Source: Octopus bimaculoides
Taxonomy: Eukaryota
Length of the DNA stretch: 64,000 bases
Assembly: GCF_001194135.2 (NCBI RefSeq)
Contig: NC_068983.1
Span: 7,003,343 to 7,067,342, forward strand
Direction of reading: 5' to 3'
Within the stretch, counting starts at the first letter, position 1. Each line of letters begins with the position of its first letter. The translations under genes and the position numbers were made by a program. The notes under the pieces were generated by a model. The model searched no databases, was not told where the DNA came from, and saw nothing but the letters and a program-made list of their open reading frames with translations. Below are positions 5,153-8,302 of the stretch, in pieces.

Positions 5153-5326
5153 AGTTCTATATTTGAGAGATGAAGAATTATGTACATTATTTACATTATT
5201 TACATTTGTCCTCATCTTGTTTGTTGTTAACACAGCATTTCGTCTGATGTAATCTCCAGCCTACATCAGGTGTCTTGGAGGAATTTCAAACGTGGGTTCT
5301 CATTCTTAAGGTATCTTTCGATGTTG

Positions 5327-5358
<32 letters not shown>

Positions 5359-5380
5359 GTTATTATTATTATTATTATTA

Positions 5381-5412
<32 letters not shown>

Positions 5413-5430
5413 GTTATTATTCAGGTCACT
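5153..5430 (-). mobile_element. Family E element (hammerhead-bearing), 5'-truncated, degenerate ribozyme
   Basis: Reverse complement of the unit at 7720-7891; core reads CUGAUGU..GAAAUG at 5229-5274; (ATT)n linker; ends in the last 9 nt of the tRNA-like head. Confidence 0.85.
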
Positions 5431-5597
5431 CAATATGGTGTAGTGGTTAAGAGCACAGGCTATTAACCCCAAGATTCCGAGTTCGATTCCAGGCAGTAAC
5501 CTGAATAATAATAATAATAACAACAACAACATTGGAAAAATACCTTAGGAATGAGAACCCAGGTTCGAAATTCCCCCAAGACACCTGATGAAGGCTG
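5431..5597 (+). mobile_element. Family E element: tRNA-like head plus 5' half of hammerhead
   Basis: A box tggtgtagtgg 5436-5446, B box gagttcgattcc 5479-5490, (AAT)n, then gacacCTGATGAaggctg truncated at 5597. Confidence 0.85.
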
Positions 5598-5914
5598 TGA
5601 GTGTGGTGGTGGCGGCGGGGTGGAGGGTGGACTGAAATCATGGTCACTGCTTTTCTGTGCTTCACAAGCATAACTGTGACTCCCGAGTGAGTAAGAGTTG
5701 GTGGCCAGTTTCATGGTTTTTTGCTAATAGTTTTAGGTGTCTTTGGAGTCGTGGGTTGACATAGATACATGCTCAGGTCTTCCACCCTTGAATCAACTGA
5801 ATATTGATGATACTACAACCTGAGGGAGAGAGTATCAACTGCACCAGTACCCCTAATTCATACCCCCCCACCGTTTCAGCTGAGTACACTGGAGCAATGT
5901 GATATGAAATGCCT

Positions 5915-7344: not shown

Positions 7345-7549
7345 TTGTAAGCGATGCTGTTAGGTGTGTCCACACCGCCCACCCCACGAATAGAGGGTTT
7401 TCACTTGTGGCTACCTATTACTAATATCATTTGAGGATTTTGGGTGTTTGCTAGAATGGTGCACACTGCATGCTATAAAGTATGTGGATTATATGGAGAC
7501 CCGAATGACAATGAATGATGGAAACAGACTCTAGAAGGAGTTTCCCCAA

Positions 7550-7595
7550 GACACCTGATGAAGGCTGGAGGGTATATCAGCCGAAACGTTGTGTT
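7550..7595 (+). ncRNA. Minimal type-I hammerhead ribozyme
   Basis: Stem I GACAC/GUGUU, core CUGAUGA, extra A, stem II GGCUG/CAGCC, GAAA, CG, UU; predicted cleavage after GUU at 7590. Confidence 0.75.
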
Positions 7596-7767
7596 ACCAA
7601 CAAACAAGATGAGGACAAATATCCGTCAAATGTAAATAATGTACACAATTCCTCATCTTTTAAATATAGAACTAAATAATAATAATAATAATAATAATGA
7701 TAATAATGATAATAATAACATTGAAAAATACCTTAGGAATGAGAACCCAGGTTTGAAATTTCCCCAA

Positions 7768-7813
7768 GACACCTGATGAAGGCTGGAGGGTATATCAGCC
7801 GAAACGTTGTGTT
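7768..7813 (+). ncRNA. Minimal type-I hammerhead ribozyme
   Basis: Identical motif to 7550-7595; predicted cleavage after 7808. Confidence 0.75.
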
Positions 7814-7968
7814 AACAACAAACAAGATGAGGACAAATATCTGGCAAATCTAAACTGTGTAAATAATTCCTCATCTCTTGAATATAGAACTTTATGTGCT
7901 GTTCTTGATAACCTTGTACTTATAAAGAAGAGTACAAACTATGGATGCATGTGTAATGTGTTGAGCCT

Positions 7969-8001
<33 letters not shown>

Positions 8002-8020
8002 TTGTAAATATGTGTGTGAG

Positions 8021-8302
8021 TGAAGGTGCATGGATTATTGGTTAGGGTATTTGGTTCACGATTGTAAGGTTGTGAGTTCAATTCCTAGCAATGCAGTGTA
8101 TTCTTGAGCAAGACCCTTTATTTCACGTTGCTCCAGTCCGCTCAGCTGGCAAAAATGAGTAGTACCTGTAATTTCAAAGGTCCAGCCTTGTCACACTCTG
8201 TGTCACGCTGAATCTCTCAGAGAACTGCGTTAAGAGCACATGTGCCTGTGGAATACCCAGCCATTTGGATAATTGGATCAACGAGAATCCTCCTTGTCAT
8301 AA
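8021..8302 (+). mobile_element. Family B/G-type tRNA-SINE
   Basis: ggtgcatgg head, gagttcaattcc B box, ttcacgttgctccagtccgctcagctgg block, tail shared with 47794-48175. Confidence 0.75.

What the first reader, a model, noticed from the sequence alone, without database searches (positions are those of the whole stretch)
7541..7891. Tandem pair of intact minimal hammerheads defining a 218-nt unit
Seen: two identical motifs GACAC-CUGAUGA-A-GGCUG-(10 nt)-CAGCC-GAAA-CGUU/GUGUU. The ribozyme is perfectly conserved while the sequence downstream of it differs between the copies. Stem III reduces to the palindrome AACGUU. Established: minimal type-I hammerheads with palindromic stem III (newt satellite 2, Penelope-like elements) cleave as dimers, and an extra A between A9 and G10.1 is tolerated in the CChMVd viroid hammerhead. 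Inference: a read-through transcript could fold as a double hammerhead and release a 218-nt monomer (7591-7808), possibly circularised as in retrozymes.
Basis: partly seen in the sequence, partly recalled or inferred. Interest (0 to 1): 0.82.

Follow-up and report, generated by a model that had tools for sequence, protein, structure and literature searches.

The report
Penelope-type hammerheads in an octopus SINE
The two hammerhead ribozyme motifs are real, but they are the already described "minimal" hammerheads of Penelope-like retrotransposons, here carried by a short non-coding mobile element of an octopus genome whose partial tandem duplication is a normal by-product of how such elements insert.

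Summary
Observation confirmed. Two identical 46-nt type-I hammerhead motifs lie at 7550-7595 and 7768-7813 (+), 218 nt apart. A structural descriptor hits only these two sites and none in 300 random 64-kb sequences.

The motif has every hallmark of the PLE "min-HHR" class (Cervera & de la Pena 2014): no helix III beyond the ACGU palindrome, an extra nucleotide between A9 and G10.1, G10.1-C11.1, and a 5-bp open helix I.

It is not an isolated tandem. It is one of three loci of a dispersed repeat in the window. The other two, 5153-5597 and 59925-60489, are head-to-head inverted pairs. One has a target-site duplication inside another SINE.

Full copies read: tRNA-like head with A/B boxes, then (AAT)n, a 55-nt leader, the hammerhead, and an 83-nt 3' module with an AC-rich tract and stem-loop. 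Four copies share the same 3' end.

Partial tandems, inverted pairs and 5' truncation are the known insertion signature of Penelope-like elements. A translated copy matches one Octopus bimaculoides entry.

The hammerheads in the other copies have decayed. The 218-nt unit is not self-paired, and the tandem lacks the head.

Best reading: a PLE-dependent SINE-like element. Release of a 218-nt circle is possible but unsupported. New member of a known kind.

The parts
7541..7673 (+). Copy u1: 5'-truncated upstream copy, made of a 9-nt leader, hammerhead 1 and the 83-nt 3' module
   Evidence: Alignment of six copies. There is no significant similarity to the element upstream of 7541.
7550..7595 (+). 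Minimal hammerhead 1. Helix I 7550-7554/7591-7595; CUGAUGA 7555-7561; extra A 7562; helix II 7563-7567/7578-7582 with a 10-nt loop; GAAA 7583-7586; ACGU palindrome 7586-7589; U17 7590; predicted cut 7590|7591
7606..7659 (+). 3' stem-loop of u1: a 10-bp stem (AAGAUGAGGA / UUCCUCAUCUU) preceded by the AC-rich tract 7596-7605
   Evidence: Fold of four copies gives z -1.7 to -2.4, with the stem kept and the loop variable
7674..7717 (+). Internal (AAT)n microsatellite joining the 3' end of u1 to the body of u2. In full copies it lies between the head and the body
7718..7767 (+). 55-nt leader of copy u2 (ACATTGAAAAATACCTTAGGAATGAGAACCCAGGTTTGAAATTTCCCCAA), containing a B-box-like GGTTYGAAATT
7768..7813 (+). 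Minimal hammerhead 2, identical to hammerhead 1; predicted cut 7808|7809
7809..7891 (+). 83-nt 3' module of u2 (stem 7825-7833/7868-7876). The element ends at ...AATATAGAACT (7891)
   Evidence: The same 3' end is seen in u1 (7673), c3 (5153) and c5 (59925)
5153..5431 (-). Copy c3: full body plus long (AAT)n plus the last 10 nt of the head. Its hammerhead (5229-5274) has decayed: A9U, a helix II mismatch, C15.2U, U16.1C
5432..5597 (+). Copy c4, head-to-head with c3: tRNA-like head 5432-5503, (AAT/AAC)n, leader. It is cut off at 5597 inside helix II of the hammerhead
59925..60250 (-). Copy c5: full-length, from head (60189-60250) to the canonical 3' end (59925). The hammerhead core 60005-60040 has decayed (G12A, 3-nt deletion). 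There is an N gap at 60105-60114
60253..60489 (+). Copy c6, head-to-head with c5: head 60253-60325 (A-box-like 60260-60270, B-box-like 60304-60314). The hammerhead core 60399-60434 has decayed (U7A, G10.1A, helix I G>A). The copy is 3'-truncated at 60489 inside the 3' stem-loop
59918..59928 (+). Left copy of the target-site duplication CAACACC(AGTT). The last 4 nt overlap the element's terminal AACT
60492..60502 (+). Right copy of the target-site duplication CAACACCAGTT. Uninterrupted paralogues of the host SINE read CCAACACCAGTTGTCAAG

Best explanation
7541-7891 is a partial-tandem insertion (a 5'-truncated copy followed by a longer copy) of a short, non-coding, SINE-like retroelement of an octopus genome. 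Its 3' half is a Penelope-like-element (PLE) type module: a leader, a minimal type-I hammerhead, and an 83-nt AC-rich/stem-loop tail.

A full-length element is about 290-350 nt. It reads: head with Pol III A- and B-box-like motifs, then (AAT)n, a 55-nt leader, the min-HHR, and the 83-nt tail.

Proposed life cycle (shown = read directly from the sequence here; the rest is inferred):
1. The head drives Pol III transcription through the element. Inferred. Shown: there is no T4 terminator in the sense strand, and two copies start at the same GGGCA.
2. A PLE RT/GIY-YIG protein supplied in trans binds the hammerhead/stem-loop module. It starts reverse transcription at a fixed internal site about 83 nt 3' of the hammerhead cut site. 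Inferred by analogy with the Anolis PLE PAc. Shown: four copies share this 3' end.
3. The endonuclease cuts both strands of AT-rich DNA with a stagger. Shown at one locus: a TSD of 7-11 bp with 4-nt microhomology.
4. Either both DNA ends prime on an RNA, giving head-to-head inverted pairs, or the RT switches template, giving a partial tandem. Shown: the arrangements, at two loci and one locus respectively. The mechanism is inferred.

The 218-nt spacing of two intact hammerheads is therefore a by-product of integration. If the locus is transcribed by read-through, the two motifs can pair through their ACGU palindromes into a double hammerhead and cut after U7590 and U7808. By analogy with other PLE min-HHRs this would be slow and probably protein-assisted. 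What the ribozyme does for the element remains as unknown as it is for PLEs in general.
For: Motif class. All sequence features listed for PLE min-HHRs are present: an extra nt between 9 and 10.1, G10.1-C11.1, palindromic 15.2-16.2, helix I of 4-5 bp, and helix II longer than the canonical 4 bp (against PMC4209133). The paper also notes dual min-HHRs 100-700 bp apart on opposite strands, as seen here.

Dispersed family. There are six copies at three loci and no others in the window.

Architecture. There is one partial tandem with a 5'-truncated upstream copy and two head-to-head inverted pairs. This is the published PLE insertion signature (PMC8557442).

Single-event origin of an inverted pair. 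An 11-bp direct repeat CAACACCAGTT flanks 59925-60489, and five uninterrupted paralogues of the host repeat read through the site.

Fixed 3' end. It lies 83 nt after the hammerhead cut site, following an AC-rich tract and a conserved stem-loop. In PAc, RT starts in an AC-rich stem-loop 85-92 nt after the hammerhead cut. PAc's endonuclease prefers 5'-ATT-3', and it cuts and extends both strands (PMC11167929).

Head. It is found only linked to the hammerhead body (3 of 3). The A-box (TGGTGTAGTGG) and B-box (AGTTCGATTCC) each match the consensus at 10/11 positions. There is no T>=4 in the sense strand of c3-c6.

Host. The only protein-database relative of a translated copy is an Octopus bimaculoides entry at 90% identity. 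Octopus genomes carry recently active PLE families (PMC13282606).
Against: There is no PLE ORF and no PLE pLTR in the window, and no octopus PLE sequence could be fetched. Homology of the 3' module to a partner PLE is therefore untested.

The head is not called a tRNA by ARAGORN at normal thresholds or by Rfam at E<=5. Pol III transcription is inferred from box matches only.

Only six copies are available, with no compensatory changes. All stem changes in the old copies break pairs.

A TSD was found at one of three loci only.

The double-hammerhead fold is 7.6 kcal/mol above the MFE in the nearest-neighbour model, and the core can be sequestered by GAUG/CGUU pairing.

No expression or cleavage data exist.
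Confidence: 0.75

Rival explanations
1. This is an active animal non-LTR retrozyme. The tandem is transcribed, the two hammerheads cleave as a dimer, and the 218-nt monomer (7591-7808) is circularised by a tRNA ligase. The circle then serves as the rolling-circle template for retrotransposition.
For: Two intact, identical hammerheads lie 218 nt apart, with 0/55 differences against 11/78 downstream. The unit length (170-400 nt range) and low GC (30%) fit retrozymes. The operational definition in the 2026 preprint (two consecutive units with complete canonical or minimal HHRs, MFE < -5) would be met. Retrozymes are now argued to be PLE derivatives.
Against: The hammerhead is minimal, not canonical with loop1-loop2 contacts. 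The NAR 2020 paper assigns minimal motifs to PLEs/Terminons rather than retrozymes. There are only 1.6 units and no longer arrays in 64 kb. The 218-nt RNA is not self-paired, and 44 nt of it is (AAT)n. The family's other loci are inverted pairs with a 5' head, which a rolling-circle copy of a 218-nt circle cannot produce. The head is absent from the tandem, and there is a TTTT in u1. For a PLE, no RNA-seq ends were seen at the hammerhead site and cleavage was dispensable for insertion in vitro.
Confidence: 0.15
2. This is an ordinary LINE-mobilised tRNA-SINE with an (AAT)n tail, into whose tail an unrelated hammerhead-bearing fragment has repeatedly nested. The tandem and inverted arrangements come from recombination or from assembly errors in a gappy draft.
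For: The (AAT)n sits exactly where a SINE tail would be, after the head. PLE endonucleases favour AT-rich or microsatellite targets. The scaffold has many N gaps, one of them inside copy c5.
Against: The head never occurs without the hammerhead body in the window (3 of 3). Both arms of the 60-kb pair run through head, (AAT)n and body, and the pair is flanked by one TSD, so head and body were inserted together. The 7541-7891 tandem contains no Ns, and its two copies differ at 11 positions, so it is not a collapsed or duplicated assembly.
Confidence: 0.08
3. This is a chance resemblance to a hammerhead in AT-rich repetitive DNA, with no ribozyme ancestry.
For: Rfam hammerhead models do not match. 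The conserved core is short.
Against: There were 0 descriptor hits in 300 random windows against 2 observed. Features not required for a chance core match are all present: the extra nt, G10.1-C11.1, the palindrome, RUH, and helix I complementarity. The same CUGAUGA-A-GGCUG...CAGCC-GAAAC core occurs with ACGU or ACAUGU palindromes in 8 of 12 unrelated metagenome contigs.
Confidence: 0.02

Closest known systems
Minimal type-I hammerheads (min-HHR) of Penelope-like elements (Cervera & de la Pena 2014, PMC4209133; Lunse, Weinberg & Breaker 2017, cited in PMC6765202)
   Same: The CUGAUGA/GAAAC/GUU core; no helix III beyond a palindromic 15.2-16.2; an unpaired nucleotide between A9 and G10.1; G10.1-C11.1; a 5-bp open helix I; a helix II longer than the canonical 4 bp; occurrence in direct tandem and on opposite strands a few hundred bp apart; mostly dispersed copies away from full PLEs
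   Different: It sits in a roughly 300-nt non-coding element with a tRNA-like head instead of in the pLTR of an RT/GIY-YIG-coding element. No PLE ORF lies within 64 kb. This sequence family (loop 2 GAGGGUAUAU) was not found in the literature held or in the collections scanned.
Animal non-LTR retrozymes (Cervera & de la Pena 2020, PMC7229834; Li, Clavereau & Pollet 2026 preprint, 10.64898/2026.07.22.740005)
   Same: Non-autonomous and AT-rich; a unit of about 200-300 nt bounded by type-I hammerheads; thought to depend on PLE machinery; TSDs longer than 4 bp
   Different: Retrozymes carry canonical hammerheads with loop-loop contacts (or newt-type with a short helix III), form arrays of up to tens of units, and give highly self-paired circles. 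Here the hammerhead is minimal, the array is 1.6 units, the unit is unstructured, and full copies have a 5' head that lies outside the hammerhead-bounded unit.
Schistosoma Sm-alpha / Sj-alpha SINE-like elements with a hammerhead (Ferbeyre et al. 1998; Laha et al. 2000; as summarised in PMC6765202)
   Same: A short non-coding retroposon combining a Pol III-type promoter region with a hammerhead. Tandem copies are needed for the ribozyme-bounded unit to keep its promoter.
   Different: Sm-alpha has a canonical, efficient hammerhead. Here the hammerhead is the PLE minimal type, and the insertion architecture (inverted pairs, partial tandem) points to a PLE partner. Sequence comparison was not possible because the paper is not held.
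Poseidon PLE of Anolis carolinensis, PAc (PMC11167929)
   Same: A hammerhead followed about 85-92 nt downstream by the reverse-transcription start in an AC-rich stem-loop. Here the fixed 3' end lies 83 nt after the cut site, following an AC-rich tract and stem-loop. Cleavage and extension of both target strands would explain the inverted pairs. The ATT target preference fits the (AAT)n junctions.
   Different: PAc is autonomous (about 3 kb ORF). Its hammerhead overlaps the start codon. The analogy is architectural, and no sequence homology was tested.

Membership tests
PLE-type minimal hammerhead (min-HHR) | Catalytic boxes CUGANGA ... GAAA(Y) ... (R)UH in type-I order | tested here: met
   CUGAUGA 7555-7561, GAAAC 7583-7587, GUU 7588-7590; the same at 7773-7808
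PLE-type minimal hammerhead (min-HHR) | No helix III/loop 3 beyond a palindromic 15.x-16.x segment, so that only a dimer gives a stable helix III | tested here: met
   A15.1-C-G-U16.1 = ACGU with zero loop. The nested double-hammerhead pairing 7586-7589 with 7804-7807 is topologically possible
PLE-type minimal hammerhead (min-HHR) | [quoted passage not shown] | tested here: met
   A7562/A7780; G7563-C7582 (criterion)
PLE-type minimal hammerhead (min-HHR) | Short helix I (4-5 bp, no defined loop 1) and a helix II longer than the canonical 4 bp | tested here: met
   Helix I GACAC/GUGUU is 5 bp including one G-U and cannot be extended. Helix II GGCUG/CAGCC is 5 bp, plus a possible G-U
PLE-type minimal hammerhead (min-HHR) | Located in the pseudo-LTR of an element encoding RT + GIY-YIG. 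True of a minority of genomic min-HHRs; not required by the motif definition | tested here: not met
   There is no ORF of 120 aa or more other than low-complexity or N-spanning artefacts in 64 kb. The paper itself states that most motifs are dispersed single elements
PLE-type minimal hammerhead (min-HHR) | Self-cleavage as a dimer (weak in vitro, protein-assisted in PAc) | not testable with these tools
   Only energetics are available: double-HH -55.5, two cis folds -59.7, MFE -63.1 kcal/mol
PLE-type insertion (non-autonomous derivative) | 5' truncation, partial tandems, and an adjacent inverted copy forming inverted repeats | tested here: met
   u1/u2 is a partial tandem with u1 truncated at 7541. 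c3/c4 and c5/c6 are head-to-head (criterion)
PLE-type insertion (non-autonomous derivative) | Sequence homology of the 3' module to the pLTR/ORF-start of an autonomous PLE of the same genome | not testable with these tools
   No octopus genome or Repbase/Dfam is available. Metagenome, viral and prokaryote scans returned no family member
Animal non-LTR retrozyme | Tandem repeat of 150-450 bp with at least two consecutive complete hammerheads | tested here: met
   Two complete motifs 218 nt apart. The array is only 1.6 units and was not reported by TRF
Animal non-LTR retrozyme | Canonical type-I hammerhead with helix I/loop 1 - loop 2 tertiary contacts (or a newt-type short helix III) | tested here: not met
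   Helix I is a 5-bp open stem without loop 1, and there is no helix III. Minimal motifs are assigned to PLEs/Terminons in PMC7229834
Animal non-LTR retrozyme | The monomer RNA folds into a stable, highly self-paired structure | tested here: not met
   z = +0.22 (linear), -0.49 (circular), 39% paired; 44 nt is (AAT)n
Animal non-LTR retrozyme | Abundant linear and circular RNA of unit length in tissues | not testable with these tools
   No transcriptome access
tRNA-derived SINE (Pol III head + body + partner-derived tail) | 5' head derived from a tRNA with internal A and B boxes | tested here: inconclusive
   A-box TGGTGTAGTGG (60260-60270) and B-box AGTTCGATTCC (60304-60314) each match the consensus at 10/11 with 33-nt spacing. 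However, ARAGORN finds nothing at default or 80% thresholds, and Rfam tRNA does not hit at E<=5
tRNA-derived SINE (Pol III head + body + partner-derived tail) | Defined 5' and 3' termini, no internal Pol III terminator, and target-site duplication | tested here: met
   c5 and c6 both start at GGGCA. Four copies end at AGAACT. No T>=4 occurs in c3-c6. A TSD was found at one of three loci

The most novel reading that the evidence does not exclude
An abundant octopus SINE family (three loci in 64 kb here) may be a true Pol III SINE whose 3' 'tail' is borrowed from a Penelope-like element rather than from a LINE: hammerhead plus RT-initiation stem-loop. If so, part of the octopus-specific SINE expansion would be driven by PLE machinery. 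Its head-to-head insertions with a single TSD would be natural in-vivo evidence that PLE proteins prime reverse transcription from both cut DNA ends. No tRNA-headed SINE/PLE partnership was found in the literature searched.
Probability: 0.3. Interest if true: 0.55.

Novelty: new member of a known kind. Interest (0 to 1): 0.3.

Why it matters
On its own, this is one more family of the thousands of minimal hammerheads already catalogued in animal genomes, so little changes. Its value is as a compact natural test case. The element joins a promoter-like head to just the roughly 185-nt PLE-type end, which delimits what a PLE reverse transcriptase may need to recognise. One inverted pair with an intact target-site duplication shows that such pairs arise in a single insertion event. 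If the family is abundant in octopuses, it would link their SINE expansion to Penelope-like elements. It would also supply many dsRNA-forming inverted pairs in a lineage known for heavy RNA editing.

Tried and rejected
- Rfam at gathering score (whole window) and at E<=10 (7450-7950; 60150-60520) gave no hammerhead or tRNA family. The only outputs were chance snoRNA/CRISPR-DR/lncRNA hits and a palindrome-induced mir-885 hit.
All carry other min-HHR families (mostly termite-gut-type samples) and none belongs to this family. Their ORFs gave only one RVT_1 hit, on the opposite strand, which is not informative.
- Viral-contig scans (2) and one prokaryote-genome scan returned nothing.
- Translating the element's open frame and searching 5.8 billion proteins gave one hit (Octopus bimaculoides A0A0L8FV75). 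Its contig is not on record, so no further copy could be fetched.
- ARAGORN on the heads gave nothing at default or 80% thresholds, and only unconvincing pseudo-tRNAs at 60%.
- A TSD search at the 7.5-kb and 5-kb loci found no direct repeat of 6 bp or more, and their flanks are unique in the window.
- I tested whether u1 continues upstream of 7541 in diverged form. It does not significantly (34 of 500 shuffles score as well).
- nhmmer with a family profile found no additional diverged copies in the window.
- Covariation analysis was abandoned. Six copies are too few, and every stem change breaks a pair.
- The papers by Lunse et al. 2017, Ferbeyre et al. 1998 and Albertin et al. 2015 are not held.
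Full report
**1. The observation**

The window is a gappy, microsatellite-rich eukaryotic scaffold. It is 38% GC, holds 3,543 Ns and has no credible long ORFs.

The string CTGATGAAGGCTGGAGGGTATATCAGCCGAAACGTT occurs exactly twice, at 7555-7590 and 7773-7808 on the + strand. With the flanking GACAC and GTGTT, the two 46-nt motifs (7550-7595 and 7768-7813) are identical.

In hammerhead numbering the motif reads:
- helix I GACAC/GUGUU (5 bp, one G-U);
- C3-A9 = CUGAUGA;
- one extra A;
- helix II GGCUG/CAGCC closed by G10.1-C11.1, with a 10-nt loop;
- G12-A15.1 = GAAA;
- C15.2-G16.2-U16.1, then U17.

I wrote a descriptor with these structural requirements. It hits only these two sites on either strand and none in 300 second-order-Markov random windows.

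The two copies differ at 11 of 133 aligned positions. None of these lies in 7541-7595 and all lie in 7596-7673 (Fisher p = 0.0027). Eight are in the loop of a 3' hairpin and one is in its stems.

Rfam does not recognise the motif, at gathering score or at E<=10. That is expected for a hammerhead with no helix III.

**2. What surrounds it**

The pair is not an isolated tandem. Self-comparison, a parts search and an nhmmer profile find six copies of one repeat family at three loci, and no more.

- Locus A is 7541-7891 (+): copy u1, then (AAT)n, then copy u2.
- Locus B is c3 (5153-5431, -) abutting c4 (5432-5597, +).
- Locus C is c5 (59925-60250, -) abutting c6 (60253-60489, +).

Loci B and C are head-to-head inverted pairs.

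The alignment gives this full-length element:
- a roughly 73-nt head (GGGCATATGGTGTAGTGGTTAAGAGCAC...GAGTTCGATTCCAAGCAGTGACC);
- (AAT)n;
- a 55-nt leader;
- the hammerhead;
- an 83-nt 3' module.

The 3' module consists of an AC-rich tract (AACAACAAACA), a 9-10-bp stem (AGAUGAGGA/UCCUCAUCU) with a variable loop, and the terminus ...AATATAGAACT.

Four copies (u1, u2, c3, c5) end at exactly this terminus. The 3' stem folds better than shuffles in all four, with z -1.7 to -2.4.

The head occurs three times in the window, always joined to the hammerhead body. It contains an A-box-like TGGTGTAGTGG and a B-box-like AGTTCGATTCC, each matching the consensus at 10/11 with 33-nt spacing. However, ARAGORN and Rfam do not call it a tRNA, so "tRNA-like" remains an inference.

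The sense strand of c3-c6 has no run of four or more T.

Copy u1 starts at 7541, 9 nt before the hammerhead. The sequence upstream has no significant similarity to the element. Copy u2 starts within (AAT)n and lacks the head.

**3. Evidence that these are retrotransposition products of the Penelope kind**

Locus C lies inside a copy of another SINE-like repeat. Five paralogues of that repeat read straight through ...CCAACACCAGTTGTCAAG.... At locus C, the 11-bp CAACACCAGTT is present on both sides of the whole inverted pair, at 59918-59928 and 60492-60502.

The inverted pair is therefore one insertion event with a staggered double cut. The last 4 nt of the left repeat coincide with the element's terminal AACT, a priming microhomology. 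The right arm (c6) ends inside the 3' stem-loop at a point of similarity between the element (TGTAAATAA) and the target (GTAAACAAA). This indicates internal priming.

The two arms meet at their 5' ends (GGGCAG.../ac/GGGCAT...). That fits two cDNAs each run to the 5' end of an RNA. No TSD of 6 bp or more was found at loci A and B.

The literature describes exactly this architecture for Penelope-like elements:
- High 5' truncation, partial tandems forming pseudo-LTRs, an inverted copy immediately adjacent, microsatellite target bias, and frequent assembly trouble (PMC8557442).
- The purified Anolis PLE protein PAc cleaves and extends both strands. It prefers 5'-ATT-3' in AT-rich DNA and starts reverse transcription internally in an AC-rich stem-loop 111-118 nt into the ORF. 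Its hammerhead cut site is at +26, which puts the start 85-92 nt downstream of the cut (PMC11167929).

Here the fixed 3' end is 83 nt downstream of the cut, just after an AC-rich tract and stem-loop. The tandem junction is an (AAT)n tract.

**4. The motif class**

Cervera & de la Pena (PMC4209133) defined the PLE "min-HHR". Its features are:
- no helix III;
- palindromic 15.2-16.2;
- a conserved nucleotide between 9 and 10.1;
- G10.1-C11.1;
- helix I of 4-5 bp with no defined loop 1;
- a long helix II;
- thousands of mostly dispersed copies per animal genome, some in tandem and some 100-700 bp apart on opposite strands.

The same paper reports no activity as a monomer and low activity as a dimer. 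Every sequence feature is met here.

Eight of them carry an ACGU or ACAUGU palindrome right after GAAA. The same core design therefore recurs in unrelated animal-derived sequences.

**5. Host**

The element has one frame open across leader, hammerhead and 3' module. Searching that 51-aa translation found a single relative, the Octopus bimaculoides "uncharacterized protein" A0A0L8FV75 (90% identity). This is evidently a spurious gene model on another copy. Its contig is not on record.

The family therefore lives in O. bimaculoides or a close relative.

Octopus genomes are SINE-rich and carry Penelope families with recent insertions (PMC13282606, PMC8967140). No held paper links hammerheads with octopus repeats.

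**6. Is the ribozyme maintained, and would the 218-nt RNA be made?**

The other three complete hammerheads are dead:
- c3 has A9U, a helix II mismatch, C15.2U and U16.1C.
- c5 has G12A and a 3-nt deletion.
- c6 has G10.1A and a helix I mismatch.

Several of these are CpG transitions. Their hammerheads are as diverged as their flanks, so there is no in-situ selection and no compensatory change.

The identity of the two hammerheads in locus A is different. The differences between u1 and u2 cluster in the hairpin loop, which looks like a difference between source lineages with constrained ribozyme and stem. It is not evidence that this locus is functional.

Folding gives little support for release of a unit. 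The 360-nt transcript has an MFE of -63.1 kcal/mol. Forcing two cis min-HHRs costs 3.4 kcal/mol, and forcing the nested double hammerhead costs 7.6 kcal/mol. A competing GAUG/CGUU pairing sequesters the core.

The 218-nt monomer is no better folded than shuffles (z +0.22 linear, -0.49 circular, 39% paired). Retrozyme circles are described as highly self-paired.

The tandem lacks the head, and u1 has acquired a TTTT at 7658-7661.

For PAc, hammerhead cleavage needed the protein and was dispensable for insertion in vitro. No RNA-seq ends mapped to the cut site.

**7. Verdict**

The best explanation is a PLE-dependent, SINE-like non-autonomous element. Its partial-tandem insertion happens to leave two intact minimal hammerheads 218 nt apart (confidence 0.75).

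The closest known relatives are the PLE min-HHRs (a member by motif), animal non-LTR retrozymes (functionally related, but two defining features are not met), Schistosoma Sm-alpha SINE-like elements (the same idea of a Pol III head plus a hammerhead), and PAc (the same spacing of hammerhead and RT start).

Novelty: new member of a known kind. Interest: 0.3.

The most novel reading still open is that this is an abundant, genuinely Pol III-driven SINE with a PLE-derived tail, which would tie part of the octopus SINE expansion to Penelope-like elements (probability about 0.3).

Noticed in passing
window 60189-60325 (also 5422-5503): Two promoter-like heads abut head-to-head (junction 60250|ac|60253) and form a roughly 70-bp near-palindrome. 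Rfam's weak mir-885 hits here (E 0.004 and 0.048) are an artefact of that palindrome. Any transcript through either inverted pair would fold into a long dsRNA.
   Followed up: partly
protein P0001 (UniRef A0A0L8FV75_OCTBM), corresponding to window 7724-7891 / 60365-60490: The only database relative of the element's open frame is a 51-aa 'uncharacterized protein' of Octopus bimaculoides. It is a translation straight through leader, hammerhead and 3' module, so it is very likely a spurious gene model on a repeat copy.
   Followed up: partly
window 59760-59924 + 60490-60620; paralogues about 31259-31433(-), 34631-34768, 37749-37795(-), 45700-45841, 53059-53199(-), 54332-54474, 62904-62973: A second, more abundant SINE-like family with core GTAAACACACCAACACCAGTTGTCAAG...GGGGGACAAACACA, usually followed by CA/TA-rich microsatellite. 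It hosts the 60-kb insertion and provides the 'empty site' comparison.
   Followed up: partly
window 8017-8290: Another tRNA-ish repeat (GGTTAGGGTATTTGGTTCACGATTGTAAGGTTGTGAGTTCAATTCC...) lies directly after (GT)15 at 7970-7999. Weak paralogues are at 44491-44562(-), 30503-30570(-) and 28304-28371.
   Followed up: no
window 60041-60144: The 10-N gap at 60105-60114 lies inside copy c5. It is flanked by a duplicated (AAT)n plus the first 31 nt of the leader (60114-60144 versus 60041-60088). This is either an assembly artefact of the inverted/tandem structure or a small real internal tandem.
   Followed up: no
loci L001-L012 (metagenome contigs): Twelve contigs, mostly from termite-gut-type JGI samples, carry other minimal hammerheads with the same CUGAUGA-A-GGCUG...CAGCC-GAAAC core. 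Eight have ACGU/ACAUGU palindromes. They are presumably host (insect) PLE-derived DNA within metagenomes. L012 has an RVT_1 ORF about 660 nt away on the other strand.
   Followed up: partly
window 5598-5640: Copy c4 stops abruptly inside helix II of its hammerhead (5597). It is followed by a G-rich stretch, TGAGTGTGGTGGTGGCGGCGGGGTGGAGGGTGG, that is unique in the window. Its origin (deletion, or filler DNA at the junction) is unexplained.
   Followed up: no
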